From contig CDMY01000356.1 of NCBI GenBank assembly GCA_001179505.1, positions 62,001 through 126,000 of the forward strand: DNA of 64,000 bases, in the 5' to 3' direction. Positions 28,345 through 53,806 of the stretch are shown in pieces. The DNA comes from Vitrella brassicaformis CCMP3155. Lineage: Eukaryota; Protista; Chromerida. A program made the position numbers and the translations under genes. How positions within the stretch are numbered: the first letter of the stretch is position 1; each line of letters starts with the position of its first letter. The notes beneath the pieces were generated by a model. The model made no database searches and had not been told where the DNA came from. It saw only the letters and a list, made by a program, of their open reading frames with translations.

Positions 28345-28798
28345 ATGAAGGTCGCCCTCACATTTGCATGTGCTCTCGCGCTTTGCTCCTCTGCCCTCGG
28401 TGAGCACTGCACGGCAGCGGACCACAAACGATGACTGACATGGGACGAAAGCAGCACTGCCGAGCCGGAAAGCACAGCAACTTGTGCATCGCGCATATCT
28501 GTGTCTGTCATGTGTGCGGCTTGTCATGTCATCCATCTGTTGGTCTCTCAGGTGGCGAGGAGACTGCATTTGTCGGCGCACCTGCGCGCCTCGGCGGTCT
28601 CCGAGCCTCACGCAGTCCCTCAAGGCAAGTCACAACACAGACACATACACCTCACAATGCAAAGTCATCTGGTCTGTGTGCCTCTATGTGTGCTCTTTGC
28701 GTGTTCATTGCAGGACGATGCAGATGGCCCTTGATCCCTCTTTCGCTGGTGGCCTGGTCGGCAACGACATCGATGCACCCAACTTGTGAGCACGGCAC

Positions 28799-28835
<37 letters not shown>

Positions 28836-29366
28836 CAGATAATCCATTCTCTCTGTTGCTGTTGGTGTGGTCTTCCCCTCCCTCTCCCTCTGGCTCTCAG
28901 CGACCCATTGGGTCTGTCCAAGACGGCCGACGATGAGACGCTCAAGTGGTACAGAGCGGCTGAGCTCAAGCACGGGCGTGTGGCGATGCTGGCGGCGCTG
29001 GGATTCCTGGTGCAAAACATCTACCAGCTGCCCGACAGCCCCTTCCAAGAGGCGAACCCCATCAACGCCGTCTACAAGCTATGGAGCGAGCGGCCCCTGG
29101 CCATCATGCAGATCCTCACCGCCATCGCGGCCATCGAGGTGCTGGGCAACCAGGTGCAGCTCCAGACGGAGGACGGGGGCGACCTGAAGTGGGACCCGCT
29201 GGGCATCAAGCCCAACGACCCTGAAGAATTCCGCAAGATGCAGCTCAGGGAGCTCAAGAACGGACGGCTGGCCATGATCTCCGTCCTCGGCATGACGGCA
29301 CAGGAGGCGCTCACCGACCAGGGTCCCATCGACCAGATCCTCACCGGCAACGTCAACCCCTTCTGA
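28345..29366 (+). CDS. Light-harvesting complex (chlorophyll a-binding, red-lineage LHC) protein with bipartite plastid leader
   Basis: FDPLG, helix 1 AELKHGRVAMLA and helix 3 RELKNGRLAMI. Leader MKVALTFACALALCSSALG..TAFVG. Four exons; intron 2 needs a GC donor at 28625. Confidence 0.95.
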
Positions 29367-31515: not shown

Positions 31516-34500
31516 ATGAGTCGTCCGGTGGGATCGTCAGGAGAGGGCCTCTGTGAACAGGACGAGCAGACAAGACGGTCAGCAGGGCCGACGCCACGCA
31601 CAGCAGAGGCGCCCTCCGCCACATCTCTCTTCATCCGCAACATCCTCAGCCCGCTGTCGTTGGGCTTCATCAGGAAGCATCCGGAAGCAGATCATACCAC
31701 CGCAGATGGCGACAGCACCACGGCAGGGCCGCGAGAAAAACCGGTGGCGGCACCCACACCGAGCGCGGGTGACGCTGCCACGTCGGTGGGGTCGCCCGAC
31801 GCATCCACCAGGACCACTCGCACCCCCACCACCCTGCCCCCCTCCCGCTCGGCCGCCTCCCACCTTCCCACCCCCTCCCCATCCACAGGCAGGAGCAGAA
31901 TGGAGGCAGGGCAGCAGACCACACGCAGCTCATCGCAGGCCACGACGCCCACCACCACCACGCCGACCACGCAGCACGTCGCCCTGAAGCCCAAACCGGG
32001 CAGCGGGCGGCGGAGGAAAGGCACTGACGTCGGGTGGATCGGGTGGCTGAGGCGTTTGTTCAAAGGCGACAGACGGCAGCGGTGCTTACGCATATCGGGA
32101 ATCGTGGCTGCGGTGCTGTTTCTGCTCATGGGGATCGGGGCGATTTTGTTTTTTACTGTCGGGCTGACGCCGCTGGCCCAGTCCATAATTGAGTCGAGTG
32201 ATCTGGCGATCGATACCATCACCGTCACCGCACCCAGAGAGGACGGATTCCATCTGGCACTCAAGGGCGCCTTACGGCGGGGGGATTTCGGTTCGGGGAT
32301 TGATGTCATTCTGCCGGCCCTCTCGCTCGACACCTATGGAGTTCATGGTGGCAAAGAGAGGAGGCTCGGCAGGTTCACCATACCCACAATGCGGCTCAAG
32401 GGCAGCCGGGCGCCGCTGGCATTCAACGCGTCTTTCACCATCTCTGACATGGAGGCATGGAACGAGTTCACTCCTGCCCTCCTGGAGGCTGGTGGGAGGA
32501 GTCGGCCGACGTGGCGTGTGGCGAGCCCCAAGCCGTTTGCTCTGCGCATCCGGCTGATGGGCATTAAGACGGAGATATCCAATTTGCGATTCGACAAGAC
32601 ACTCGACCCCAATGGTGAGACAGTGAGCACATTTCCTACTACACGCGCATCCATGATGTCTCTCTTCGGCCATGCGCGTTTGCTCTGCAGCAATGGGGGC
32701 GTCTCTCGGGTCAGGCCTTCAGGACTTCAAAATCACCGACTTCGGCCTGGACGGCTCCCCCGACATCTCGGGCGGCGCCGCCCTCTCACTCACGGCACGA
32801 TTCAAGTCACCATCCAAGCTCGGTGTCGACCCACTTGGCGACCTCGATCTTACCCTCGTCTACGCCAACACCACAGTGGCATCACTGCGGGCACGGCAGC
32901 CGTCGCTGCGGCCAGGACAGAACGAGTGGCATATGGACGGCGAGCTGGCGACTGTTGTGGCTGGCGAGGGGTCGGCGGAGAGGGCGCGGGCGATCAGTGG
33001 GTTTGTGGCGGCTGCGATGGACGGCAAGGGCATGACGGTCAACGTGAGGGGCAACAAGACGACCGAGCCGATCTTTGCAAGTGAGTGAGTGAGGCAGGGA
33101 CAGGAGGTGCTGCACGCAAGAGAGAGAGGGGCAGTGTGTAATGATGAAAATACGATCGGCTAAGTGAGTCTTGGCATCATCACATGCATGGTGCACAAGA
33201 TGAGCACTATTCACGTCCGCTGAACAACACACCACCACATCCATCCATCCATCCATTCGTCCGTCCATCCATCCATCCATCCACACACGTGCACTTCCCT
33301 GCCCACACACACCACACCCACCCTCTCTCCTTCTCTGTCTGTGTGTTGTCCTGTCTGCCATCAGCTGCGGTCGAGGCACTGGACCTCTCCCCACCGATCG
33401 GCGCCCTCCCCGGCCTCGCAGACGGCGGTGTGTTCAAGTCGCTAACATTCAAAGGTCTGAGCATCGACCTCAGCCCGTTCGACCATGCATCGGAAGATGG
33501 CAGCCCGTCTCTGGCCATAAACAGCGTCGACAGCGGCCGCAAGCTGCAGGGGAAGACCAAGACCAACGTGGTGGGGCTGGGCGGGACGGCTGAGGTCATG
33601 TTCGACAGCCCACTGGGAGACAACTCCCCCATATACGTTGACAAGGTGAGCAGGGCAGGGGGAGGGAGGGATGGCAACGGGAGGAAAGCGTGTAGGGAGA
33701 TATGTGGTGTGTGGTCTGTCGTGTTGGTGTCTGTGGATGTGTGTATGAAGGTGTCTCTGACAGCGTCGATCCATGACGGCATGGTGGCGGGCGAGCCGTC
33801 GGTCGGGACATTGAGTGCTCTTCTGAAACCAATCGCACAGCCCGCCGAACCACCAAGTGAGTGACCACCTTCAGTTCACCAATCGGTGCATACAAACAAT
33901 GCGTACGGCTTATGTCTCCTGTCTGTCTGTCTGCAGACATGTCTGTGTACGAGTGGCTTGCCGGGACTGGCCCTTACGTCGGCCCAACACCCCCACCCAC
34001 CGTGACCGTCAGGGAGCCGCTCAGCCCCCCTTCGCCTCCCCTAAAGCACCACCGATCGCACCAACCATCGCCCAAACCCACCACACACCCACACCCACGC
34101 CCCACATACACCAGCGACCCGTTTGCCGGCCGGCACCTCGCTGCTGCAGCAGCGGCTCCTGTGCCCCTGCTGTTCGACATCCAAGGCAATATGACTCTGG
34201 CGGACGGCGGCAAGCCCTTCAGTACATTCACGAGTGCCTTCCTGACGGAGCCTGACGTGTACATGCTCATCAAGGGGGGCAGCGCACAGGTGCGGCTGCG
34301 GACGGCGCTGGGGCCACTGGTCCTCCCCAGCCTCACCATCGAGACGAGCAGGGAGACCGCACAGCCTCTCAAGGGATTTGGCGGCAGGGAGGACAGCAAG
34401 GGCGGCGAGGGGGCAGAGAGTGGCTTGGCGGTGGAATTGACCGGATTTGAGTTCTTGTCCACCGGCAAGAGGGACGCCCTCGACCTGGAGGCCAGCGCCA

Positions 34501-37500
34501 CTCTCACCAATCCCTCCAACACCTCCGTGTCGCTCGGTGACCTCATACTGGAGATGACCCTGCCGGACGCCAGCCTGGCGACATCATCAAGGCGGAGGCG
34601 CATGCAGAGAACCGCACCGGTCCTCGGCTATCTAGCGGCATACGGTGTCGAGATCACGCCTGGCGACACCACTCTCAGTCTGAAGGGACGTCTGCGGCCC
34701 GACGACATGGACCTTCCCATTGTGTCTGAGCGCCTGTCGGCCTACCTGCGAGGCCACCCACTCCCTGTGCGCGTGGCCATTGCTCCCCCACCAAGCGGCG
34801 CCGTCTGGACTTTCGCCGACGAGCTGTTCGCGCGGCCAGGATGGTTCTATGAGGCCCTGTCATCCTTCGAGACAATCACGGCCCTCCCCCCACTCAGTGA
34901 GCTGATGGCCAAGCCCGGAGAGACGCCGAGCGGAATCTCCTCAGATCTAGTGCAGAAGGTGACGTACGAGAGCCTGACGGTGACCATCAGCCAGACTCCC
35001 GACAGGCTGCCGCTCAAGGCCCTACTCGACATCGAGACCCGCAACCCTCTCGGGGGCGGCAACACCATTGTGGAGACCGTCAGCCTGGCCGCCACCATCA
35101 GCTCATCTGAGGGCAGGCCCCTCACGCGCCTGAACACCGCCCCCCAGAAGGCCGTCATGACCGAGAGCAGCACCGGTGACAACCTGGCTTTCCGTCTGCC
35201 GTACACCGGTGACATGATTCTCTACGGCAACGGCGAGGCGGTCGCTTCATTCGCCACCGACACCCTGTTCGGCAAGGGGGCGGACTCGGATGCATCTTCC
35301 GTCGGTTTGATGGTGAATGGGACGGTGTCTGCCGTGGTGGACACGCCCATGGGCCGCCTCACCCTGTCGGATCTGCCGGTGGAGCAGGTGACCACTCTGG
35401 ATGAGGGGGGCAGCCTCTTCGACAGCCTGGGGGTGAAGCTGGTGCTCTTCCAAGTCACGAAGCTCGCCATCAACCCCTCCTCGCCACACACAGGCTCGGG
35501 GGCCTATTCGACACGCGATCTCACCATGGAGGTGCTCGTTGAGCTTTCCGTGGCCAATCCCTCGCCGTTCGGCGTCGTCTTCGACAAGCTGGACCTACCC
35601 CTGCACGTGTACATGAAGTCGCTGGGGGTAGGCGGCGACCTCACACTGATCGCCCCCACCCTGGCGCCTTCACCTGACCTCTCCCGGCTGCGGCTTGTCG
35701 GGCGGGTCAAGGCCGACGCGGCCGTGCAGGAGCCGACAGTGAAGGGTGAGATGGCCCGCCTGGCCAACGGCCTGTTCTCGGGTGGGGTGTTCCCCGTCAA
35801 GGTAGCCGGCCGCGACGACAACAAGGGCGCAGGTGGGAAACTGCCTCCGTGGTTAAGATCAGTGGTCGATGACCTGGCGCTGGACTTCAACCTCGACGGG
35901 TAAGCTAAGCGACCAAATGACAACCAAACAGAGGCAACAAACATCACATGACGATCGTGTCTATGTTTGTTTCTCGCCTGTCATTGATTGCAGTGGTCTC
36001 GGCGGCTCCTTGATCGACACAGTCGGTGTGCTCAATCTGTCCGTGCAGCCGGTCGACGACGACACCCTTGTGCTGGCGGGTATCCTTGACGTCACGGCCA
36101 ACAGCCCCTTCGGCTCCGACGTGCCCCTCACCGTTCGCAAGGTGTCCATCGACTCGACCCTCCACTTCCGGCAGGGCGATGACGCATCCCTCACTCTCGG
36201 CCGCATGAACCTCCCCAGCCGAGCCCCGCTGGTCCAGGAGCTGACGCGCGTCAACGGCAGCGACAAGCTGATACTCCAGCTTCAGCTCAACGACACTGTC
36301 CGCATCCAGAAGCAGTCGGCCGTGTCGTCCATCACGCCCTTCGCCGCCTTCATCGGCGCACTGGCCAAGGACGGATACGTGCCGCTCGACATCCGCGGCA
36401 AGGCGGGCATGGACGTGGTCGTGAGCGCCACAGTCACCGAGGGCAGGCAGAAGAAGCTCTCCGACATCCCGCTGACTCTTGACGCGATCCCGCTGGACTT
36501 CACCCTCACCATGGGCGAGAAGGATGGCGAGGGGATATCGGTGGACCTCGACTCGTTCGTCTTCGAGGGGCCGTCCGAAGAGGGCGGGCTGGACATCTCG
36601 GCCACTGCAGGCATCGTCAATCCGTCAGACGCATCGCTTTTCCTCGGTGATCTCTCATTCGAACTCTACCTACCGGCGTACGATGACACCAACACCACCG
36701 GCGACGGCCCAACAAGACGCATGCTCCAGGCAGCAGCCGCGTCCTCATCTGTATTGCTCGGCACAGTGGAGGCCAAGTCGGTGTTCCTGCGGCCGGGCAA
36801 GACGCCCATCGAGCTCACCGGCAGGCTCAACCCGGCAGCCGCGGCCCTGGTGGTTGTCTCACGCCGCTTCAGCGAGTACGTGCGCGGCGGCGACCTGCCC
36901 GTGGTGGTCAAGACGTTGCCCAAATTGAGAGAGGGGGGCGGGTGGTTCAATCCTTTCACACCCTCCGAAGAGTCGTCGAGAGAGGCGCCACCTATATGGC
37001 TGAAGGAGGCACTGGAAACGATTGCGATTGACACAAAGCTGCCCCCACTGAGCGAGCTTGGAGGCGGTGAGGGTGGTGGTGACCTGGTCTCTGACATCTC
37101 GGTGGGGCGTTTCGAGATTGACCTCGGTGGAGTGGCGGAGACGCAGCGTGCGATCGGTGTGGTGGGGGAGGTCGGGACGGTCATCAACAACCCGCTGGGG
37201 GAGGACACGCCCCTGACCGTCGAGGCCATCGAATTGGCTGTCGACCTGCTGGGAGACAACGGACAGGCGTTCGGGGTCATGAAGACGCAGCCCACCCAGA
37301 TACCTGCAAGCAAGCAGAAGGTCAGATGCAAGCGCCGCGCCCTGACACTCTCGCTCAGCTCATGTATGTATGAATGGATTTGTTACTGTCTGTCTGTCTG
37401 CCTGTTGCATACATGGCATGTGTCACTCACAGGTGCTCGGCAATGGCCAGATCCGTCTGGACTTCCCACTGGTGGCCACCCTGTCCCTCACAAGCGACGG

Positions 37501-40500
37501 GTCACCCTTTGTCGCATTCACGCGAGATCTCCTGGAGCGCAAAGGGGCCGCTGCCCCTCTCACCATTCGAGGCCGGACACGAGTCAACGTGCAGACGCCG
37601 ATGGGCCTGCTCGACCTCGACGGCCTGCCCATCACATCCAAGCTCAACCTGACAAGCGGCGACCAGCGGGAGGAGGATGCCCTGCAGGTCTCCGTCGATG
37701 ACTTCAAGCTCACGGGCGACTTCGACAACCTCACTGCTCCGGCAATCGCCCAGAGCCTCACGGACGTTGGCAGGAGCACGTCGCCCGATGGCTGGGTGGC
37801 CATGGAGATCGCCACCACCCTGACGTCCAGATACCTCATCACCATCGACTTCGGCAACCTGGCCCTGTCCGCCGCCCTGAGATACGGCAACCAGGATATC
37901 GGCGTGGTGGAGACGGACGGGCCTTTCATGCTCAAGGCGGGTGACAGCCAGCTGCGGCTGAGAGGCTACCTCTGGCGCACAGTGAGGAACAAGCGGCAAC
38001 TCAGCGACCTGTTGCAGGCGGCCATGGGGGGTGCAGAGGGTGGCGGGGATGCCAGAATACAGCTGGAGGGAGTAAGGCTGGCGTATCCCCTGGGGTCTAA
38101 GCAGGAGGGTGGGAAGGGGCTTCCCGGCTGGGTGCCCAAGGTGGCGCAGGTCGTCAAGTTCGACACAACCATACCAAGGTCAGTCAGTCAGCATGAATGA
38201 GCGAGCACACAGGCAGGCACGCACACGCCCTTCGTGTGTGGTCAGCTTCGGCTCCCCAGCAGACTTTCTGAAGCCACTCGACGTCTCGTCTGTCGCCCTC
38301 GCCCCCGTCGTGAATCGACCGACAGACGTGGACGTCCACCTGGGCACAAATCTCACCTTCGGCGGGCCTCTGATGCCCTCCCTCACTATGACCTTCACAG
38401 ACGTCGTATTGGGGGGAGACCTTTCCGCGGGGCCCGGCCAACTCGGCGCTTTATCGCTCAAGTCCAGCAAGATGGCGACTGGGACAGGGGGAGGTGGCGT
38501 GCTGCTCAACCTCGGGGGCCGGATGAAGCTGCCTGAGCAGGGGGACGCCCTGACGGCCTTCATTGAGGACTTCCTCAACAGCACAGACCGGCAGCATGAC
38601 CTTGCATTGGCGGGCACATTCAGTGGCCGCGTGGACCTCGGCACACTGGGCGTTCCCATCGACCTGACAGACGTCGCCCTCAACCAGACCCTGCCGCTCG
38701 AGAGCTCTCTGGATACCTTCGGCGTCGAGGTTGCGGGTGTTGAGTTCACGGGGGAGGATCGGAATGGCGGCCTTGCGATGGACATCTTCATCAACATCAC
38801 CAACCCCTCGCCCGCCCAAGTCACCCTCGGCGACCTGCGGCTCAACGTCTTCCTGCTACCAGTCGAGGGCGAGCCTGTCGACGCGCCAATGGTGCCCATC
38901 GGCCACGTGGACGTGAGGCAGTATGTGCTCAAGCGGAACGAGCACGAAAGCAAGTGCACGGGCATCCTGATGCCGGCCGCCGAAGACATGGATGCGGTGT
39001 CTGCGCGTATAAGCAGGTTCCTGCAGGGGAAGACCCTCTCTGTGCGGACGGTGCTCGATGAGACCTACAAAACATCCAACACCCCGCCTCCATGGCTGCA
39101 AAACGTCATCCATGGCCTTGACCTGAAGTCTGAGCTACCCTCCCTGGCCAGCGTGACGGCCGGGGCGGACTCGAAGCTGGTCGACTCCCTGGTGATCAAT
39201 GACTTCTATCTGCGGCTGGACGAGGTGGAGGACGGGGCGGAGGAGCCTGCCATTCCACTGAAGGGCGTGCTGGAGGTGGTGGTCAACAACCCTCTGGGGT
39301 CGGCTACCAAGATGAGCATAGAGTCCCTGGGGATGTCTCTGTCTCTTCTGGACGGGAAGGCGGAGGACGCACCTGTCCTGGGGAGGCTTGAAATCCCGCC
39401 AGTCGAGATCAAGGACTCCCGATTCGTCAACGGGGTAAGAACGAAACCACAAACACTACGACGAAGCTACCAACCAACCAACCAACCAACCAACCGGTGT
39501 CTTGACTGACATGTTTGCTCTGGTCTCTCTAACATCAGGATGACGACTACAGCCAGATTGCGTTGACCATCCCGCTGTCCACTCCGCTAATGCTCGATGA
39601 CGTGGACAACACAGCCGCCTTCGCCAAGCGGCTGCTCAGCGCTGTTGAGAGCGGTGCAGCGTCCAACACGACTGATGCGCTTCGGGTGATTGGGGGCGCT
39701 GACGCGGTCGTGTCGACCCCAATGGGACGGCTGTCGCTCACCGACCTGCAAGTCGATGAGGAGCTGCCGCTGACGGGCCCGGCAAGGGAGGAGGAAGAGA
39801 CCGCTGTGCCCCTGTTCGAGGTGCAGAATTTTACCGTCGAGGAGTTCCTGTTCCTTGAGGACTCGGGCTCATCGCCGATCACCCCGGACTTCCCGCTCGA
39901 GTCGCAAGAAGCCGACACCCCCTCGCCCCCTCTCTCACCTGGCGGCGACCCCCTCACGCCCTCTGACCCCTCCACGGACACCTCCACGGACACCTCCACT
40001 CCCTCCGAGCCTTCCCTTCCTTTTTTCCCGCCGCCCCCGCCCCCCCAGCCGGAGCCACCAGGGCTGCCGAATGGAGACCAATTCTTCGTCGACGGCTTAT
40101 TTGGCCGCCGTGACCGGGCTACCTTTTTTGGGCCGCCGCGAGCGCTGCAGCGGCGTGGCCAGATCGCCAACGGCATGAGGGTTTCGTTGGGCCTGGCTGT
40201 ACGAAATCCCGCGCCGATTGGGCTGGCATTGGGCGATCTTAAGTGGAGCGTGAGAAGGGATGACGTCACGATTGGCGAGCTGAGGACGATGGACGTCATT
40301 CTGGCACCTGGGTCGGATGAGTCGGCTGTGAAGGTGAGAGGCACGCTGCAGGCGCCTCCGGGTGTGGACTCTGAGGCCTTTTTCACTGAGCTGGTGGGCG
40401 AGATGTTTGGTGACGACCAAGCGGCACTACAGCTGACACCGAGACCGATGAGGGAAGGGGCACCCGACTGGCTGACAAGAATTGTCAACGGCGTCTCAGT

Positions 40501-43500
40501 GTCCGTGCCTGTCAACGGGTAAGTGCATGCCTAAGAGTTGTGTATCCATCCATGCATGTGTGTGTGTACTTGCCCTCTCTCTCTCTGTGTCTACCCTTTG
40601 CAGCATCCTGAGCAGTGACTCCCTGGTCGCCTCACTTGACGTCTCCTCCCTGAGCCTCATCCCTCTGGGTGGCCAGGAGGTGCAGCTCAAGGGCTCCCTC
40701 ACCATCACAGCCAACAACCCCCTCGGGGCCAACGTCGACATCGGCGTGTCGGAGCTGGGACTCAGCGGCACTCTCTACGGCCCCTCCTCCAAGCCTATAT
40801 GCGTTCTGCGCGTCCCGTCGCAGACTGCAGTGGTCTTGACTGGCGACAATCTCGACGTCGAGCCCAACCAGATTGTGGTGGGCTATGACTTCGAGGGCAC
40901 ACTGACCATGGAGGAGGACGGCGAGGCCTTTGCCGATCTGGTCGAGTCGATGCTATCTAAGGGCCCATCCTCGGCAGCCCGGTCGCTGGCGATGCAGCTT
41001 ATGGGCACGTCGGCAGTCACCGTCATCAGCCCCCTCGGCACGCTCCCTCTCGACAAGGTGCGGATCGACAATGCCATGCCCCTGCTGAAGGAAGGCAGCG
41101 AGGCCATCGACCTCTCCAACGCCTCGCTCGGCGACATCAAGTTCGGCTCGCCGCCCCGCGGCCAAGAGGGCGTCACCTTCACCACCAATCTGGAGGTCGA
41201 CCTCCCTGCTTCCTTCCCGCTCAGCCTCGACTTTGGCAGTGCTACCTTCGACCTCACCTTCACGCCTCCGGTCGACAACGCCACTCGTGCTGTGCTCGGT
41301 GACATCACACTGACGCCCCTGGCCCTCAAGAGGGGCACCAACAAGATCCCCGTGGAGGGCTCGCTCGTGCCGCCCACCACCGACAGCGACCGTGCCGGTC
41401 TCAACTCATTCGTGTCGCGGTACGTTGCGGGCAAGCCGGCAGCGTTGAAGGTGGTGGGCAAGTCCATCTATCTAGAGGACACCTTACCATCGCGAGCGAG
41501 CCCCAAATGGCTGCAGAAGGTGGCGGCGGCGCTTGTGGTGGAGATGGATGTGCCGGGGGGCAGCAAGGCGGCCTTCGGTGACATTTCTGTGAAGGACCTC
41601 GGCATCACCGCCCGTCGCGGGAGCGACGATGGGGTCAACAATGCCATCCGCTTTGAGGCTGTCGTCTCGGCTGAGCTGATCAACCCCCTCGGCCCCGACT
41701 CGCCCGTCACCGTTGACCGAGCTGCTGTGGCCATGAAGCTCATGAGAGGGGACGCCATACTCGGATCTCTGGATAGCGGCCTGCTGGAGGCGGGCTCTGG
41801 CTCGTCGCGCGGCAGCAAGCAGATGGTGACGCTGCCCTTCAAGAAGACCGAGCTCGTCTTCCCTGACAGGGGCAGAGCCTTCGGCGCTCTGGCCGCTGAC
41901 CTACTGAAGAGCGACACGGAGGGCGAAAGCCCCTCCCTCACCATCGACGGCACCATTGCGGCATATGTCTCGTCGGATCTCGGCCCTCTGCATCTGACCG
42001 AGCTGCCCCTGTCCACAAACGTCACTCTCTCCGGCCTTGACATTGCTGTCGAGTCCGACGGAGGGCTGCGTGAGTGGGGGCTGACCGACGCCAGTGATGG
42101 CTTTCAGCTCGACGCAACCGTGGCATTCGATGTGGGAGGGTCGGCATCTTCGTCGACGGGTGCATCGATGTCGCTCATCGACCTGGGCGCGGTCATGCTC
42201 GACGCCTACATGGGCGGGAAGCGCCTCCTCCGCCTCACCGCACCCAGCCTGCGGCTCGTCGACGGCAGCAACACCCTCAAGATCCTGGGCCAGATGACCC
42301 CCAAGTACACCGACATTCCCACTGCGGCCAGCCTCATGTCGTCGGTCGTGTCGGGCGATAGCGTGAAGCTCACCGTCAGGGGGGCGGAGGGGGACGACTC
42401 AAATTCCCCTGAATGGGTGAAGGCGGCTGTGTCTGCGCTGGAGCTGGAGGTGCCGGTGAAGATCACCGCTGAGAGGGGCGGCGGTGGGCGTGAGGAGGGT
42501 GAGAGCGCTTCGCCTTTCCTGAGGGATGTCGAGGTCGGCGGCATCGTGCTGGATTTCGTGAGGGGAAAAGACCCCTTCCTGGAGGGTAGCGTGGTGGTCG
42601 AATACGCGCTGCCCAAGGGAGTCAACATCTCCTTCGACGTGAATCAGCTGTCCCTTGCCACCAGCATGTCCCGCGCACCTATCTCGGAGGTGGGTGCCGG
42701 TAAGCCCACATCACTCCCCACACAGGTGGGCCGTCTCAGCGTCACCACGGCCGACGTCTCAATCCCCGGCGACTCCAAGTTCCGGGCGGTCTTCGACAAC
42801 GGCGTCATTAAGGTGAAGGACGGCGAGCGGGCCGCGTTTGAGGACTTCCTGTCTGCTGTCTTATATGACTCCGGGGCCACTCGGCTGTACCTGAGTGGTG
42901 AGGCATCACTGGTGCTCGTGACCAGGCTGGGCCAGCTCTCGCTGGATGGCGTCAAACTCGACCTCTCCCAAGACCTCAAACGTATGCAAATACAGCAGGA
43001 GATGGCGGGCGACTGCTTACCTTACTGTGCCTGGTTGCTTTCTCTGTCTCTTTGTAGACTTGGGTGGCATCGACAGCGACTCCGTCAGTCTGGGCACTCT
43101 GCAAGTCTCAGAAGGCCGCGCGGACGGTCTCATCATGAGCACAGAAATTGGCCTCAAGAACGCCGCCTCCTTCGGTGCCCGTCTGGGCGACGTCAAGCTC
43201 GACCTCTACGTGGCCGAGAAGGACCTCCCAGAGCGGCCTCGCCTGAGGCCCCCTCCTCGCAACGGCGGCGGCCTCCTGGCCCCACCCCCTCGGCCCATGC
43301 CTATCCCTATCGAGCAGCAAGCGCCGCCACTGCCTGAGGACGGCGACCTGATGCTCTATGTGGGCCAGGTGACCGTCCGCAACCTGACGCTGCTGCCGGG
43401 GAAAGAGTCCAAGATGCCGATCGACGTCCTGGTGTTCCCCACACGTGAGGGCGACAGCGCCCAGGGGCCCCGCCGGCTTATATCGCAGTATGTGTCGCGA

Positions 43501-44182
43501 AAGGGCAGCGCCACGCTGCTCAAGGGCAGGCAGAACAGCACGAGGGTGCCGCTGGTCAACAAGGCGCTGAGCCGGTGGGAGTCGGGAGTGGCGATATCAG
43601 GGGCCAAGGAGAGCTTCATGCAGGGGGCGGAGCTGGACCTCGCTTCGCTGCCGCTCTTCGGTCGTGGGCTGGAGGTGACTGCCCGTTTGATCATCAAGAA
43701 TCCCTTCCCTGTGGACGTCAAGCTGCTCTACGTCGACTCGACCCTTTTCAAAGACGGCGTGTGAGTACCCACCACCACCGCACACAAAGAGATGGATGAC
43801 ACACACACGTGTTTGTGTGTCCCTCCCTCGCTTTGTGTCTGTCTCGTCTCCCAGCAAGATAGGCCAGACGACGATAGACTGGCGGAATGATCCGATGGTG
43901 ATTCCCGGGGAGTCGACCACCAAGACGGATGCCTACAAGCTCAATGTGGGGGCCGTCACACCACAGGCACTCACCACATTCTGGCAATCGCTCCAGGGAT
44001 ACTCGACCGTTTCGGTGCGTACGTACGTGCCTGCATCACCAGCATAGCATACATGGATGGGATGTGTCTGTCACCCCACCCCCTTCGGTTGTGTGCAGGC
44101 GGAGGGCATTGTTGAGGTTGTTATCGGCGAGTACGGGACGCTCATCGATTACAACGAGGCCACGATACCGACGACATTCTAG
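31516..44182 (+). CDS. Giant (~3,700 aa) type II single-pass membrane protein with ~21 tandem LEA_2/DUF3712-like beta-sandwich units
   Basis: Long ORFs (31516..33084, 33861..35903, 35869..37701, 38109..39509, 39563..40522, 40482..43337, 42946..43764) are linked by short GT-AG introns. Last exon AEGIVEVVIGEYGTLIDYNEATIPTTF*. One TM (ISGIVAAVLFLLMGIGAILFFTVGL) follows a basic cluster. Recurrent NPS..LGDL and NPLG..TPMG.L.L motifs. Length is estimated by hand. Confidence 0.8.
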
Positions 44183-45902
44183 CCATGCAGGCAAACCGGA
44201 TACGTGTCGGTCGGTCGGCTGGTGCGCCATCGCGTTTTTCGGTTCGTCCGCCATGCGTTTCTTGCGCAGTGTGGCATACCATCCATGCACCGGTCGGTCA
44301 TGTAGAGTTAGACATAGCAGCACTCAGTAAGTACGTGGGGGTGATAGGAGAGGCGAGGCGATGCTCTGCACACAAGTACGTTGGTTTGTTGGTCCTTTTT
44401 TTGCCGTCTTTTGATTGACTGATTGATGACCGATTTTATGCATGCGGCTCGCTCGTTCCTGGCTAATTGACAGTGCTCCTGGCACGCACTGTGTGGGTGG
44501 TGGGTGCGATGAGTGGGTGCGATGGGTGGGTGTGGCGGGTGGACATCGACCTATATTTGTGAAGCCACCAAGTGACGCGACACACACTAACTTCTTCTCC
44601 TTCTATGTAGATACTCAATGTAATGTGGACCTCCCTCCTGTGATGTATGGTATGATGTAATGTCTCATGCATCAGCCACATCAACGACCGATCGCAGCCA
44701 CCGTCAGGTATAGATGTCCATAACTGCGGATTGGGGTGGATCGTAGGCAGGAGTGAATAAAACGACCAACACAGGCAGACAGACAGACACACAGGAGGCA
44801 GACAGACAGACACACAGGCAGGCAGACAGACAGGCGGACTGATGGTTGAAGGCAATTAAAGGGGCTGCCCGGGCCGACTCCCTTGCAATTGAGAGCAGGT
44901 CAGGCAGGCACTCAGATGCACGATACGATGTACATGTGTGTGTGTGCATATGCATATGCATGTGTGGTCACACACATCGTTATTTATGTGGGCCGGCCAA
45001 AGTGTCTACCTGCCTGCCTTACCCTACCCCACCTGCCTTCTCTGTGTGTGCCCATGTGCATATACATGTGATTTGATACGATAGATACGTGTGACTTACT
45101 TATATATTGCTATGTAGGGTAGGTAAGTGGAGTGGATGGATGCTGCATACAGTAAGTACTTACACCTGCAATCGATCGATCGCAGCCACTCAGTCACTTT
45201 GTTGTAAGTAAGGAACCCACTGACCGACCGAACAGCACCGCACCATTAATTGAACAAAGGACGTCTTGCACACCTGCGGGATGCATCTGCGTCCGTCGGC
45301 GACTGACTGAGGTCACCAGCAATGTGACGTGGTCAGCGAGAAGACACTGATATACATGAAACAGCGATGCTGCTCGCCCAGCAGCCTCTCAGCTTCCTCC
45401 GTCCCGCGCGCCTTCTGAACGATGTACGGAGAGACACACCACGACATGAGTGGTGTGTGCAGGCTCGTACGTGTGCTCCCGACCAATCCATGGCCCTCTG
45501 CTTCTCTTCCTCGGCTGCCAACTCAATGGCGGCTGATGGACAGCAGAGACGAAACAAGAGACATTACGCGAGACACCACATTTTCCTGCCAGCCATGCAC
45601 AACGTGCTCACCAACTCGGTGTCAGCTGCCGAGACGCATCAGAGCTGAGAGAAGAAAGAGCCGTCTCAAGTGCGGTGGCCAGTTAGTTGAGTTGGTTGGT
45701 CAGGTGCGGTGCGGTGCATTCATTCATTGCGTTTACTTACGTGCATAGACCATCATTCATTCATTCGCCAGCAACGTAACGTCCGTCATATACACAACAC
45801 ACGACAGCCATATATACACACATGTACGTACATACATACGCAATGCGTATGTATGCAGCATCCATCCTCCCATGTACATACATACAACGATATATGCCCG
45901 CC

Positions 45903-46201
45903 NNNNNNNNNNNNNNNNNNNNNNNNNNNNNNNNNNNNNNNNNNNNNNNNNNNNNNNNNNNNNNNNNNNNNNNNNNNNNNNNNNNNNNNNNNNNNNNNNN
46001 NNNNNNNNNNNNNNNNNNNNNNNNNNNNNNNNNNNNNNNNNNNNNNNNNNNNNNNNNNNNNNNNNNNNNNNNNNNNNNNNNNNNNNNNNNNNNNNNNNNN
46101 NNNNNNNNNNNNNNNNNNNNNNNNNNNNNNNNNNNNNNNNNNNNNNNNNNNNNNNNNNNNNNNNNNNNNNNNNNNNNNNNNNNNNNNNNNNNNNNNNNNN
46201 N
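45903..46201. other. Assembly gap (299 N), followed by a poly-C run
   Basis: N characters in the sequence. Confidence 0.99.
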
Positions 46202-47296: not shown

Positions 47297-48270
47297 ATGA
47301 CGGTGCGCGTGTGGACTGACGGTGAGTGAGGGGAGGGACAACAGGGGGATGCATGGGATTCGATGCCTTCTACATCTCTCTCTCCGCCGCTTCTCTGTGA
47401 GCGCTGCCGCGTGCAGGTGCCTGCCTCGGCAATGACCATCCGCTCGTGCCGGCTGGGCCATCTGGTTCGGCGATGACCATCCTCGGTAAGGGAAGGCACA
47501 GAACACAAGAGACACGACAGGAGGGGGGAAGAACACTGGTGGGTGCGTGTGTGTGTCTGTGTGTGTTGCTTGTGTGTTAGCAACGTCTGTGGTCGTCCGT
47601 TCGGCAAGGAGACGAACCAGCGTGCAGAGTTGGTGGCCGTCATCAAGGCACTCGAGGCGTGCAGGTGCGGGCAGACGTGTGTGACGGCCATCAAACACAA
47701 CGGATGGACTTCTGTGTGCATGTGCAATCTGTGCAGGAATGACCTCAGCACCACCCTGGTCATCTTCACGGACTCCAAGTACACGATCGACTGCATGCGC
47801 AAGTGGCTCAAGAAGTGGAAGAAAAATGGCTGGACCAACTCATCGGGCAATGTAAGTACACTCTCCCACGCGGACCAAAGACATGCAACTCAACATCATT
47901 GCATCATTGCTCTATGTGTGTCGTGTGTATGTGTTGTTCAATCAGGACGTTGCCAACCAGGACCTGATCAAGAAGTTGGACTCCCTCATGCAGGCAGGCA
48001 CAGCCACAACCCAAAACAATACCGACCCGCACGTGTGTATGTGTGGTGTGTGTGTGTGTGGGTCAGGAGCGCAAGAAGGGCGGTGCGCATTGCCACCTCG
48101 AGCACCTGCCGGCCCACAACAACAAACATGGCAACGAGCAGGCCGACCTCATGGCCAAGAGGGCTGCCCAGAATCTGCCCGTGCCTTCCTATCCGGACAG
48201 CATCATCCTCTACGTCAACTACGTCAACTACGATGACGACTCCGACTCCTCCGATGACGACTACTACTAG
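47297..48270 (+). pseudogene. RNase H1, tandem copy A; frameshifted in exon 2 (pseudogene or consensus error)
   Basis: Six exons: VWTDGAC, RAGWAIWFG, TNQRAEL, FTDSKY, WLKKWKKNGW, VANQDLIK and HLPAH..GNEQADLMAK. Only 11 nt (47434-47444) lie between GGCAAT and CGTGCC, which breaks frame. Confidence 0.7.
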
Positions 48271-49904
48271 TCCTCCTCCGATCCCTCCGATCACACACAC
48301 ACACACACACACACACATACATATACACACACACACATACACACACACACATACATGCATACAGGCTGGTGGTAGTGGTGCCTTGGGGGAGGGGGAGGGG
48401 GAAGGAAAGCGGAGGACACGTGTCGGTCTGAGTGTGTACACACAATACAGATACATAGATGACTTACTTACGTCGTATCCATCCATCCATCCACCCATAC
48501 TCACTCGGGCGATGTGGCGGTATGGGTGTTCAGAGGATAGGCTGGCCTGTCATGTGCAGATTAGGGCAGGCAGCTCACCTTGTACAGTCAGTACAGCACC
48601 TGTGAGAGAGCACCTCTCCTTCCATCCACTACACACACACACATAGATACACACAGAGGTGGGTGGGTGTTCCTGTCTTGTCGATATGTGGGGAGGCAGG
48701 CATCTCGCCACACCCAAGAGTTGCATCTCAGGGAGGCACCTCAGTTGCCACCCTCGGATGTTGCCTTGGGTGTGGCGACGTGCCTCCCTTCCCACAGCTG
48801 CGCTTTTTGTCGACGGACAAAAGCAAGCACTAATGGACTGACAGATGAGCGATCGAGCGAGCGAGCGAGCGTGTGCGTCGCTGCAAAGCAAAGGCAACGC
48901 AGCAGAAGCACACGATCGCTGCTTGGCTCGGATCTGGTGGCCTGCCTTGTGGGGGAAGGAAGAGAGAGAGGGCAGACAGCCATGCAAATGGTATGTCTGA
49001 TGCCGCTCTGGGCCTGTGGGTAATGCGCTAATGTAGTGCACGCATGTACACACTTATACAGTATGTATGTACATATGTGGGCGCTGACAGACAGGCCCTC
49101 CCGGGCCCCTGTTTTGTCAGAGTTCGTCTGACAGTCATGACTGACCGACAAACGTGAGTGACGTGACTGAGTGCGATTGATTGGCCGGATGGGTCAATCA
49201 ATGCACCTGTTGTGGGTGGAGCCACTGCTATGTCTCTCATGTCTGTCTGTCTGACTGACTGTCTGTCTGCACCCAGAGCGGAGTGCCTGTACAGAAGGCT
49301 GCGCACACGACGGACGAGTTGGTTCTGAGTGAATCACATCACATCCTCCCGGTGCGATTTGATTTGTCGCGTGTCGTATCGCGATGGTCAGACAGGGCGA
49401 TGCGATGAGGTCGTGTGTGGGCACACATTCGGGCCACCCACTTCAGACACCTTCACCCACCCCCACGCCACACTACACACCAACCGCCATTGCAAAACCC
49501 ACACACATTCCAGCAGCTGGCCACAGCACACCATCACATCAACCCTCATCTCCTCCCTCCTGCGGATGAGTCAGACAGTCAGACAGACAAACGCACGGAG
49601 GGAAGGGTAATTTCACCAGATTCTCTCGCTTCCTGCGCTTGCACAAGACGAACAGAGGACAGTCACTCACCCCCACACGACGGAGACACGGAGAATGGGA
49701 AAAATCCCATCATCCAGGGTGACCGGAAAACGGGACTCCCAACCGTCAACCGCAGCCCGCACATTTGGGCGTTGAGAGTCTTCTTCAGTTGTAGTCGTCC
49801 AGACAAAGGCGAAGGAAGGAATCTTCGGTCAGTTCGAAACTGTTTGGAGCACTTGAGCACAGCTTGTTGGTTGAACGTGAGGCTTGGCTTGCTGCTGCGC
49901 GAAG

Positions 49905-52744: not shown

Positions 52745-53601
52745 TCACAGTGGCCTTTTCTTGTTCTTGTTGGCGTAGTACTGGTCCTCTCTCTCCTGCT
52801 CCTCCTGCGCTGACAGCACCAGCATCTCCGCCTCGTCAACCGTCAAGTCGTCCAGACGAGCAATCAGCACCTTCCGCTCGTAATCGCGCAGCTGCACACA
52901 GAACACATCACATGAGACAGCGTCAACACAGCCACGTCACGTATCCATCCACCCTCCCCTCCCTCCCTCCCTCCCTCGCTCCCTCTGACTGACTGACTGA
53001 CCTGTCGAGCGTATGTGGTGTCTTTGGAGTAGACGCGGAAGACATAAGTGAGTGTCCAAATGAGTGTGGCGACGCCCACGGCGCCCACGCCAAACCACCG
53101 CTGGAGGTCGAACTCGTCCATGCCCGTTGTCTCCAGGATGTAGCTGTAGAGGAAGAACGGCGCTATCGACAGGAACAGCGTGCCCAGGATGACATTGCCG
53201 CGGGTGAGGGGGATGGGGAAGTCGTTCTTCTCCACGTCCTCCTCCCCCAGCTTGACCACGGCGGCCTTGAGCTCCTCGATCAGCTGCCGCCGGTCCTCCT
53301 CGCTCATTTCTTCTTCGTCTTGGCCGCCCTTCCCGTCGCCCTGTGCTGATGCCGGTGTGACGGTCTTCGTGTCCGCATCTGCCTGCCGCTGCGTCGGCTG
53401 CTGTGCCGGCGGTGCGAGAGATGCCGACGGCTTCTCTGCGACTGTGTCGCTGAGCCTCGTCCACTGCGGTGAAAGGAGGGATGCACGCCGGCCGATAGAG
53501 GAGAGCCGCACGCCAGATGGGGAGAAGCAGAGCAGCTGCTGCAGCGGTGCAGCTAGCAGCAGCAGCAGCAGCAGCGTACCTGATGACAGAGATGGCCACA
53601 T
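52745..53601 (-). CDS. DUF3007-family plastid (cyanobacterial-origin) membrane protein with bipartite leader
   Basis: Two TMs, then WTLTYVFRVYSKDTTYARQ|LRDYERKVLIARLDDLTVDE, matching the remembered DUF3007 pattern TYxFRVxxKxMTYxQQLxDYE. Leader MWPSLSSGTLLLLLLLAAPLQQLLC-FSP. Confidence 0.8.
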
Positions 53602-53636
53602 CTTTCTTCTTGACCAGCCAAGCTCGCCATCGCATG

Positions 53637-53644
53637 AGCTCGCA
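53637..53644 (-). promoter_or_regulatory. TGCGAGCT candidate promoter element (DUF3007 / HPR pair)
   Basis: AGCTCGCA on the plus strand, with a near copy AGCTCGCC at 53621. Confidence 0.55.
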
Positions 53645-53806
53645 AATAGATGAGCCTCCGTTCCTGGCGCTTCGTCTTCGAGCTGCAGCATGTCTGTGGT
53701 ATGCACCTCATCATCGATTCGCGGAAGATCTTTGCCCATCCAAGCTGAGACCTGACTCTGGGGCCATCTGCTCACGTCAGCACTCATGGAGGAGGCCACG
53801 TCGCGG

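What the first reader, a model, noticed from the sequence alone, without database searches (positions are those of the whole stretch)
31516..44182. ~3,700-aa membrane-anchored chain of ~21 strictly alternating LEA_2/DUF3712-like modules
After a cytosolic low-complexity N-terminus and one TM, the protein is a chain of ~150-180-aa units alternating between two types. Type A (10 copies) has NPS..LGDL.L..G.V..L.PG..G.L.P and ends P.W[LV]..[VL]..L. Type B (11 copies including the first and last) has NPLG..+.V..+.+ and ends V.TP[ML]G.L.L..L. Many NxS/T sequons fit a luminal or extracellular location. Related small proteins (yeast Tag1 and Vac7, human TMEM106B) were predicted by remote homology to carry LEA_2 domains with possible lipid-binding grooves. 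A 21-unit A/B chain could be a very long lipid conduit or tether, for example across the multi-membrane plastid, the alveoli or the thick cell wall. The function is inference.
Basis: partly seen in the sequence, partly recalled or inferred. Interest (0 to 1): 0.75.

Follow-up and report, generated by a model that had tools for sequence, protein, structure and literature searches.

The report
Giant membrane-anchored chain of LEA-2 domains
This is a real gene of the alga Vitrella for a roughly 3,750-residue single-pass membrane protein made of 21 alternating LEA-2 (DUF3712/Tag1-type) beta-sandwich domains. The protein type is already described in fungi and is shared with Toxoplasma-like parasites, and its function is still unknown.

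Summary
Window 31516-44182 (+) is one 13-exon gene of Vitrella brassicaformis. My model gives 3,730 aa and the public model (P0195) 3,801 aa.

The protein has a 190-aa Ser/Thr/Pro/Arg-rich tail, a basic cluster, one transmembrane helix, and then 21 gapless modules in strict B-A-B…-B order (10 A, 11 B). The family call also holds:
- DUF3712 scores 141 bits and LEA_2 38 bits, both above the Pfam cut-offs.
- AlphaFold models of B-A and of A (pLDDT 82 and 86) show seven strands plus one helix.
- Their best solved neighbours among 48,161 chains are the LEA-2 structures 1XO8, 8B7D (TMEM106B) and 3BUT.

It is not a new kind. Levine (bioRxiv 10.1101/2021.03.12.435176) already described fungal DUF3712 proteins of over 4,000 aa, one with 15 gapless LEA-2 domains. 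This scan also reported a paralogue earlier on other DNA (s1-239471).

New here:
- Vitrella has four paralogues.
- Collinear giants occur in Rhytidocystis, Hammondia and Besnoitia, with shorter or partial relatives in Cyclospora and Chromera.
- The A/B di-domain is the repeating unit in alveolates and partly detectable in fungi.
- The ectodomains are almost cysteine-free.

Presence in fungi argues against a plastid- or alveolus-specific role.

The parts
31516..44182 (+). Whole gene: 13 exons (31516-32614, 32691-33080, 33365-33645, 33751-33856, 34150-35899 [public model starts this exon at 33937], 35994-37320, 37433-38178, 38246-39434, 39539-40518, 40604-42981, 43058-43760, 43855-44014, 44099-44182 including the stop)
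   Evidence: Frame chaining and GT-AG junction search; public protein P0195 maps to these exons at 98-100% identity
31516..32082 (+). Cytosolic N-terminal tail, aa 1-189. It is low-complexity (T, S, R, P, A, G) and ends in a basic cluster just before the transmembrane helix
   Evidence: Composition and sequence; the same basic cluster precedes the helix in all homologues checked
32083..32160 (+). Single transmembrane helix (aa ~190-215). The positive-inside rule gives type II topology: N-terminus in, C-terminus out
   Evidence: The only Kyte-Doolittle 19-residue window above 1.6 in the protein
32188..32613 (+). Module 1, B-like first LEA-2 module
   Evidence: The Pfam DUF3712 best stretch (aa 284-421 of P0195) covers its second half plus the start of module 2, as at other B-to-A junctions
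32720..33058 (+). Module 2, type A
   Evidence: modA HMM, 54.5 bits
33550..34349 (+). Module 3, type B. It is split by introns 3 and 4, and in the public model carries a Pro-rich insert
   Evidence: modB HMM halves at E3 and E5
34428..35894 (+). Modules 4 (A, 34428-34904), 5 (B, 34938-35405) and 6 (A, 35448-35894)
   Evidence: modA 86.6 bits, modB 155.9 bits, modA 93.2 bits
36004..38176 (+). Modules 7 (B, 36004-36528), 8 (A, 36538-37068), 9 (B, 37078-37657, across intron 6) and 10 (A, 37775-38176)
   Evidence: modB 121 bits, modA 134 bits, modB 33+52 bits, modA 28 bits
38256..40513 (+). Modules 11 (B, 38256-38708), 12 (A, 38721-39164), 13 (B, 39174-39778, across intron 8) and 14 (A, 40169-40513, preceded by a ~130-aa acidic, Pro-rich insert)
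   Evidence: modB 114 bits, modA 135 bits, modB 28+37 bits, modA 41 bits
40614..42977 (+). Modules 15 (B, 40614-41093), 16 (A, 41118-41564), 17 (B, 41565-42035), 18 (A, 42060-42485) and 19 (B, 42516-42977), all in exon 10
   Evidence: HMM scores 149, 124, 132, 122 and 37 bits. The AlphaFold model of modules 15+16 has pLDDT 82 and pTM 0.75; the model of module 16 alone has pLDDT 86
43081..43545 (+). Module 20, type A with a Pro-rich insert
   Evidence: modA halves, 22 + 8 bits
43582..44179 (+). Module 21, terminal compact B-like / canonical LEA_2-like module across introns 11 and 12
   Evidence: NPF motif and a B-type final strand pair seen in the sequence. It aligns collinearly with the C-terminal ends of the Rhytidocystis, Hammondia and Besnoitia proteins

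Best explanation
This is a giant member of the DUF3712/Tag1 branch of the LEA-2 superfamily: a type II single-pass membrane protein. Shown: one gene; one transmembrane helix preceded by a basic cluster; 21 gapless LEA-2 beta-sandwiches built from a repeating B-A di-domain; conservation of this plan in chromerids, apicomplexans and fungi. Inferred: the disordered 190-aa tail faces the cytosol, and the roughly 3,500-residue, cysteine-poor, sequon-enriched chain lies in the lumen of an endomembrane or vacuolar compartment or on the cell surface. There it forms a fairly stiff rod, which I estimate at very roughly 70-100 nm if each module adds 3.5-5 nm. My preferred mechanism, by analogy with yeast Tag1, Vac7 and human TMEM106B, is a membrane-anchored luminal scaffold or sensor. 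Its LEA-2 modules would bind hydrophobic ligands or luminal material along the rod, and its short cytosolic tail would pass the signal on or anchor the protein. I do not favour a continuous lipid pipe between two membranes.
For: Gene model and public model agree. Pfam on P0195: DUF3712 141.4 bits in 5 stretches, LEA_2 38.2 bits (cut-off 25.4), Tag1_C 23.9 bits. Orthologues score Tag1_C 48 and 61 bits. The DUF3712 match runs from the second half of a B module into the first strands of the next A module. This is the out-of-register relation Levine describes. Fold: both modules have 7 strands plus 1 helix. In an unbiased VIA-align search of 48,161 chains, module B's ranks 1, 3 and 4 are 1XO8 (Z 7.0, 129 aligned), 8B7D TMEM106B (Z 6.7, 126 aligned) and 3BUT (Z 6.3, 119 aligned). 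Module A's rank 1 is 3BUT (Z 6.3, 116 of 125 aligned), 1.2 Z units above rank 2. The A and B profiles are homologous (hhalign E 1.4e-5, 108 columns). The topology is conserved: a single N-proximal helix after an R/K cluster, and 0-8 Cys per 2,000-4,000 aa of ectodomain in nine full-length homologues that have a helix. Sequons are enriched 1.7-fold. pTM of 0.75 for a two-module model suggests a fixed interface. The presumed Toxoplasma orthologue TGME49_281440 was detected in tachyzoites, and its gradient profile tracks SAG1 (r 0.97) and V-ATPase subunits (r 0.95), not a cytosolic marker.
Against: No localisation, ligand or phenotype exists for any giant member, so the function rests on analogy. 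The structural Z-scores (6-7) lie in the range the tool calls middling; the case rests on all three LEA-2 structures converging at the top together with the Pfam scores. Tag1_C is below its cut-off in this protein. The rod length is my estimate, not a computation. The hyperLOPIT comparison used 9 markers and one replicate. The orthology of TGME49_281440 to HHA_281440 rests on ToxoDB's shared numbering, which I recall but did not test.
Confidence: 0.55

Rival explanations
1. The 21 LEA-2 modules would line up their strand-1/strand-7 grooves head to tail into one continuous hydrophobic channel, as LptC-LptA-LptD jellyrolls do in the bacterial periplasm. Lipids would move from the anchoring membrane to a second membrane or the wall some 70-100 nm away.
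For: [quoted passage not shown] The modules here are gapless and the two-module model has pTM 0.75. Module A has weak matches to the lipid-holding sandwiches PDE6D (Z 4.6) and UNC119B (Z 4.4).
Against: The groove is absent from the plant LEA-2 NMR structures and from Levine's TMEM106B and Vac7 models. No C-terminal membrane anchor or docking domain is seen. There are no Pfam matches to chorein/VPS13-type or other lipid-transfer families. Long disordered Pro-rich or acidic inserts interrupt the chain at modules 3, 14 and 20 and would break a continuous groove. The PDE6D and UNC119B Z-scores are tied with unrelated glycosidase sandwiches.
Confidence: 0.12
2. A purely structural stalk or spacer. 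The chain would be an inert rod of sandwich domains, like bacterial Ig-repeat adhesins or the yeast wall stalk proteins. It would hold two surfaces apart or project a terminal binding module from the plasma membrane, with no lipid binding.
For: The Foldseek two-domain hits are tandem sandwich adhesins and similar proteins (Esp, SdrG, transglutaminase C-domains). The only invariant residues across 16 pairs are P (of NP), G and W, which look structural. The terminal module 21 differs from the others. The Toxoplasma profile is closest to the surface marker SAG1.
Against: It does not explain why the LEA-2 fold specifically, and the strict A/B alternation, are kept from fungi to alveolates. The shorter relatives Tag1, Vac7 and TMEM106B are lysosomal or vacuolar regulators rather than wall proteins.
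Confidence: 0.25
3. A gene-model artefact: the region would be several shorter genes, or a decaying pseudogene array, wrongly fused.
For: Only that no transcript data can be read here, and that one splice acceptor (intron 4) is ambiguous.
Against: All 13 exons are open and in phase through canonical GT-AG introns. There is only one transmembrane helix or start-like feature. The public model is a single 3,801-aa protein. A complete 4,271-codon ORF comes from one Rhytidocystis transcript contig. The paralogues and the Hammondia and Besnoitia models of 3,680-4,152 aa are collinear to both ends.
Confidence: 0.03

Closest known systems
Fungal multi-copy DUF3712 proteins (for example the Ustilago maydis protein with 15 gapless LEA-2 domains; Levine 2021, bioRxiv 10.1101/2021.03.12.435176)
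   Same: Short cytosolic N-terminus, one transmembrane helix, then a gapless concatemer of LEA-2 sandwiches up to over 4,000 aa. The Pfam DUF3712 model sits out of register across every second junction. UMAG_02810 (2,507 aa), Ramicandelaber, Sphaerobolus, Umbelopsis and Backusella proteins are direct HMMER hits of the Vitrella profile. A-type modules recur in them at a spacing of about 300-450 aa.
   Different: This protein is from an alveolate alga, whereas the paper says DUF3712 is almost all fungal. It has 21 modules. The B modules of alveolates are well conserved, while the fungal ones are too diverged for my B profile. The paper does not describe explicit A/B alternation.
Saccharomyces cerevisiae Tag1 (vacuolar type II membrane protein that terminates autophagy)
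   Same: Type II topology, a short unstructured cytosolic tail, and a luminal concatemer of DUF3712/LEA-2 domains. Pfam Tag1_C matches the end of B modules: 23.9 bits here, 48 and 61 bits in orthologues.
   Different: Tag1 has 3 modules, not 21. Tag1_C is below its cut-off in this protein. No localisation or autophagy link has been shown for the giant forms.
Human TMEM106B and yeast Vac7 (single LEA-2 luminal domain)
   Same: Same fold: 8B7D is rank 3 for module B (Z 6.7, 126 of 147 aligned). Same type II lysosomal-type topology.
   Different: They have one domain only and no detectable sequence similarity to this protein (the profile search of PDB sequences found nothing). They belong to a different branch of the superfamily.
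Apicomplexan and chromerid orthologues: Hammondia HHA_281440 (3,680 aa), Besnoitia BESB_030960 (4,043 aa), a Rhytidocystis pertsovi transcript ORF (4,270 aa), Cyclospora OEH76291.1, Chromera Cvel_765
   Same: Collinear A/B chains, the same transmembrane helix and basic-cluster layout, and Cys-poor ectodomains.
   Different: All are annotated only as hypothetical or transmembrane proteins. The coccidian B modules carry large inserts. None has been studied: no paper in the library names these gene IDs in its main text.

Membership tests
Pfam DUF3712 (PF12505) | HMM score above the curated cut-off (24.1 bits) | tested here: met
   141.4 bits in 5 stretches on P0195. Three separate exon pieces score 31.7, 25.4 and 29.8 bits.
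Pfam LEA_2 (PF03168) / LEA-2 superfamily | HMM score above the curated cut-off (25.4 bits) | tested here: met
   38.2 bits on the whole public protein, with the best stretch inside B module 9. Single exon pieces alone stay below the cut-off (13.9-14.9 bits).
Pfam LEA_2 (PF03168) / LEA-2 superfamily | Fold: a beta-sandwich of seven strands with one alpha-helix | tested here: met
   DSSP on the AlphaFold models shows 7 strands plus 1 helix in B, and 7 strands plus 1 helix plus a short C-terminal helix in A. Top solved neighbours are 1XO8, 8B7D and 3BUT (Z 6.3-7.0).
Pfam LEA_2 (PF03168) / LEA-2 superfamily | Hydrophobic groove or cavity between strands 1 and 7 that holds a lipid (proposed, not established, for the family) | not testable with these tools
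Tag1-like type II vacuolar LEA-2 concatemer | Unstructured cytosolic N-terminus, single transmembrane helix, all LEA-2 modules on the C-terminal (luminal) side | tested here: met
   One hydrophobic helix at aa 190-215 after an R/K cluster, with all modules C-terminal to it. The orientation is inferred from the positive-inside rule.
Tag1-like type II vacuolar LEA-2 concatemer | Pfam Tag1_C (PF22786) above its cut-off (27 bits) | tested here: inconclusive
   23.9 bits here; 48 and 61.4 bits in the Hammondia and Rhytidocystis orthologues.
Tag1-like type II vacuolar LEA-2 concatemer | Vacuolar or lysosomal localisation and a role in ending autophagy | not testable with these tools
   There is only a weak hint. 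The gradient profile of TGME49_281440 resembles SAG1 and V-ATPase subunits.
Bridge-like lipid transfer proteins (VPS13/ATG2 repeating beta-groove; Lpt-type jellyroll bridge) | Chorein/RBG or LptA-type domains forming one continuous groove, with both ends docked on membranes | tested here: not met
   There are no such Pfam matches. There is no second membrane anchor. Groove continuity itself could not be tested.

The most novel reading that the evidence does not exclude
The B-A di-domain chain could be a new kind of luminal or extracellular bridge-type lipid transporter. In this reading the LEA-2 grooves of successive modules join into a hydrophobic track of about 70-100 nm that carries lipids from the anchoring membrane to a distant membrane or wall. 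Such a system would be shared by fungi, chromerids and coccidian parasites.
Probability: 0.1. Interest if true: 0.8.

Novelty: new member of a known kind. Interest (0 to 1): 0.35.

Why it matters
The LEA-2 superfamily includes TMEM106B, which is linked to dementia risk and serves as a SARS-CoV-2 receptor, and the yeast regulators Vac7 and Tag1. No molecular activity has been demonstrated for any of them. The giant concatemers are the least studied branch. This work shows that a 21-module, strictly alternating form is conserved module for module between a free-living alga and coccidian parasites, and that the presumed Toxoplasma orthologue is present in the Toxoplasma proteome. That gives a genetically tractable organism in which to ask what the long LEA-2 chains do. 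The practical gain is a sharper annotation and a testable target, not a new principle.

Tried and rejected
- **Word-index search with exon 10:** the 792-aa query found nothing. The tool's length window excludes the giant relatives, so this blank carries no weight.
- **Profile search of PDB sequences:** the B-A profile gave only chance hits with E above 0.05. The link to solved LEA-2 structures is visible by fold only.
- **Foldseek on the two-module model:** it returned generic tandem-sandwich proteins at TM 0.13-0.29. These were not informative, so I used the all-against-all VIA-align search instead.
- **Literature search for gene IDs:** searching the Toxoplasma, Hammondia and Besnoitia gene IDs found no paper.
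- **HyperLOPIT class assignment:** it could not be read because the stored tables are cut. A CRISPR paper on hyperLOPIT-unassigned proteins does not list the gene.
- **Plastid, alveolus or wall specialisation:** considered and rejected because of the fungal homologues.
- **Independent repeat expansion in each lineage:** rejected at least for the terminal modules, because the strongest alignments are collinear to both ends.
- **Joined spliced model:** I did not build or search one. Exon pieces were searched by reference, and whole-protein scans used the public protein P0195 returned by a tool.
Full report
**Source and gene model**

The assembly has 72,700,666 bases in 1,064 contigs, and the window is C356:62001-126000. 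Proteins encoded here and at the paralogous loci are deposited as Vitrella brassicaformis CCMP3155. On the + strand between 31516 and 44182, long open frames follow one another in changing phases. A search for GT-AG junctions that keep the frames open gives 12 introns of 67-293 nt and 13 exons. These sum to 11,193 nt, or 3,730 codons plus the stop at 44180-44182.

The public protein P0195 (3,801 aa; precomputed Pfam PF03168 and PF12505) maps to the same exons at 98-100% identity and starts at the same ATG. It differs only in using the acceptor at 33936 instead of 34149. That adds 71 Pro-rich residues inside module 3.

I did not build or search a joined spliced model. Exon pieces were searched by reference. 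Whole-protein statements rest on P0195, which a tool returned.

**Architecture**

- Residues 1-189 are rich in Thr, Ser, Arg and Pro and end in a basic cluster.
- Residues 190-215 are the only hydrophobic segment in the protein (Kyte-Doolittle mean 2.7).
- By the positive-inside rule this is a type II protein with about 3,500 residues outside the cytosol. That part has 2 cysteines.
- It has 25 NxS/T sequons against 14.6 +/- 3.5 in shuffles.

**Repeats**

- Exon pieces match each other at up to E 9e-27.
- I aligned 16 in-exon B-A pairs from this gene and its paralogues. I split them into A and B alignments and built HMMs from them.
- On the exon translations and on P0195 the HMMs find, in order: a B-like first module, nine A-B pairs, a tenth A, and a compact B-like last module. 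That is 21 modules, 10 A and 11 B, with scores up to 156 bits.
- The first module counts as B-type because the Pfam DUF3712 model matches aa 284-421. DUF3712 elsewhere spans the second half of a B module and the first strands of the next A module.
- The A and B profiles are themselves homologous (hhalign E 1.4e-5 over 108 columns).
- Three disordered inserts interrupt the chain, in modules 3, 14 and 20.

**Family and fold**

- On P0195, DUF3712 scores 141.4 bits in five stretches and LEA_2 scores 38.2 bits. Both are above the curated cut-offs. Tag1_C scores 23.9 bits, just below its cut-off.
- The AlphaFold model of modules 15+16 has mean pLDDT 82 and pTM 0.75. The model of module 16 alone has pLDDT 86. 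Each module has seven strands and one helix, and A has an extra short helix formed by the P.WL motif.
- Foldseek on the two-module model returned only generic tandem sandwiches.
- The VIA-align search against 48,161 representative chains does not depend on Foldseek. For module B it ranked 1XO8 (Arabidopsis LEA14; Z 7.0, 129 aligned) first, 8B7D (TMEM106B luminal domain; Z 6.7, 126 aligned) third and 3BUT (archaeal LEA-2; Z 6.3, 119 aligned) fourth.
- For module A, 3BUT ranked first (Z 6.3, 116 of 125 aligned), 1.2 Z units above the next hit.
- These Z values are middling by the tool's own note. The convergence of all three solved LEA-2 representatives, together with the Pfam scores, makes the fold assignment secure.

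**Relatives**

- The genome holds three more loci: C613 at 55% identity (public model CEM26372.1), and two nearly identical copies on C376 at about 35% (CEM07275.1, 4,152 aa; CEM07615.1).
- A profile of the exon-10 region from the four copies was scored against 1.84 billion representatives. It found only 244 proteins at E <= 0.001.
- The best non-Vitrella hits are a complete 4,270-aa ORF from a Rhytidocystis pertsovi transcript, Hammondia HHA_281440 (3,680 aa), Besnoitia BESB_030960 (4,043 aa), Cyclospora and Chromera proteins, and Rhodelphis. Fungal hits include Ustilago UMAG_02810, Ramicandelaber, Sphaerobolus, Umbelopsis and Backusella.
- The A/B alternation holds in the alveolate proteins: 21 modules in CEM07275.1, 23 in Rhytidocystis, and 16 in an environmental protein.
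- In fungi, A modules recur at a spacing of 300-450 aa, with the intervening modules too diverged for my B profile.
- The strongest alignments between P0195 and the paralogues and apicomplexan proteins are collinear and reach both termini. At least the terminal parts of the array therefore predate the chromerid-apicomplexan split.
- Among the full-length homologues checked, nine have one N-proximal helix after an R/K cluster and a cysteine-poor ectodomain. Two showed no helix: CEM26372.1, whose alignment to P0195 starts only at P0195 residue 205 and so may be N-terminally truncated, and an environmental ORF.

**Comparison with the literature**

Levine's preprint (10.1101/2021.03.12.435176) makes four relevant points:
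- DUF3712 is an out-of-register LEA-2.
- DUF3712 proteins reach over 4,000 aa.
- One Ustilago protein has 15 gapless LEA-2 domains with six DUF3712 matches.
- Tag1 is a type II vacuolar protein with three such domains.

The kind is therefore known. The preprint calls DUF3712 almost entirely fungal and does not describe the A/B di-domain unit. The alveolate giants and the alternation are modest additions.

This scan had already reported a paralogue on another contig with the same conclusion (s1-239471). I reached the apicomplexan link independently through.

**Function**

- The lipid idea rests on one archaeal crystal structure with a hydrophobic groove and an unmodelled ligand. The plant structures and Levine's TMEM106B and Vac7 models lack the groove.
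- I could not inspect model coordinates, so continuity of a groove across modules is untested.
- Three points weigh against a pipe between two membranes: there is no second anchor, there are three disordered inserts, and no bridge-type lipid-transfer domains were found.
- The fungal and coccidian homologues argue against a plastid, alveolar or algal-wall role.
- The presumed Toxoplasma orthologue TGME49_281440 is in the hyperLOPIT tachyzoite data. The orthology rests on ToxoDB's shared numbering, which I did not test.
- Its first-replicate profile correlates with SAG1 (0.97), V-ATPase subunits (0.95) and CPL (0.90). It does not correlate with a cytosolic marker (-0.67) or with GRA14 (-0.16). 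This fits a membrane protein of the surface or endomembrane system but does not go further.

I therefore favour a Tag1-like luminal or surface rod acting as scaffold or sensor, possibly binding hydrophobic ligands module by module. The plain structural stalk and the lipid conduit remain as rivals.

**Verdict**

The family assignment is confirmed. The finding is a new member of a known kind.

Noticed in passing
window 28431-29366 (+): An ORF with a strong Pfam chlorophyll a-b binding (light-harvesting) match, E 8e-37, lies just upstream of the giant gene. This fits a photosynthetic alga.
   Followed up: no
window 47543-48646 (+) and 44001-46000: An ORF with an RNase H match (E 6e-12) lies downstream and may be a retroelement remnant. 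GC falls to 0.50 in the 2 kb after the gene's stop, against 0.62 inside the gene.
   Followed up: no
window 52864-53838 (-): An ORF with a DUF3007 match, E 2.6e-9.
   Followed up: no
L003/L015 (C376:~43-53 kb, +) and L004/L016 (C376:~276-281 kb, -): Two paralogue copies on one contig, in opposite orientation, are nearly identical in protein over more than 700 aa. This is either a recent inverted duplication or an assembly duplicate. Their public models differ greatly in length (4,152 versus 2,524 aa).
   Followed up: partly
P0195, P0001, P0004, P0007, P0008, P0012, P0018, P0172: The ectodomains of the whole family are almost free of cysteine (0-8 Cys per 2,000-4,000 residues). This is unusual for a luminal or extracellular protein of this size.
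   Followed up: partly
window 33937-34149 (+): The public model reads this stretch as coding, a 71-aa Pro/His/Thr-rich insert inside module 3. An alternative GT-AG intron would remove it. The choice cannot be settled without transcripts.
   Followed up: partly
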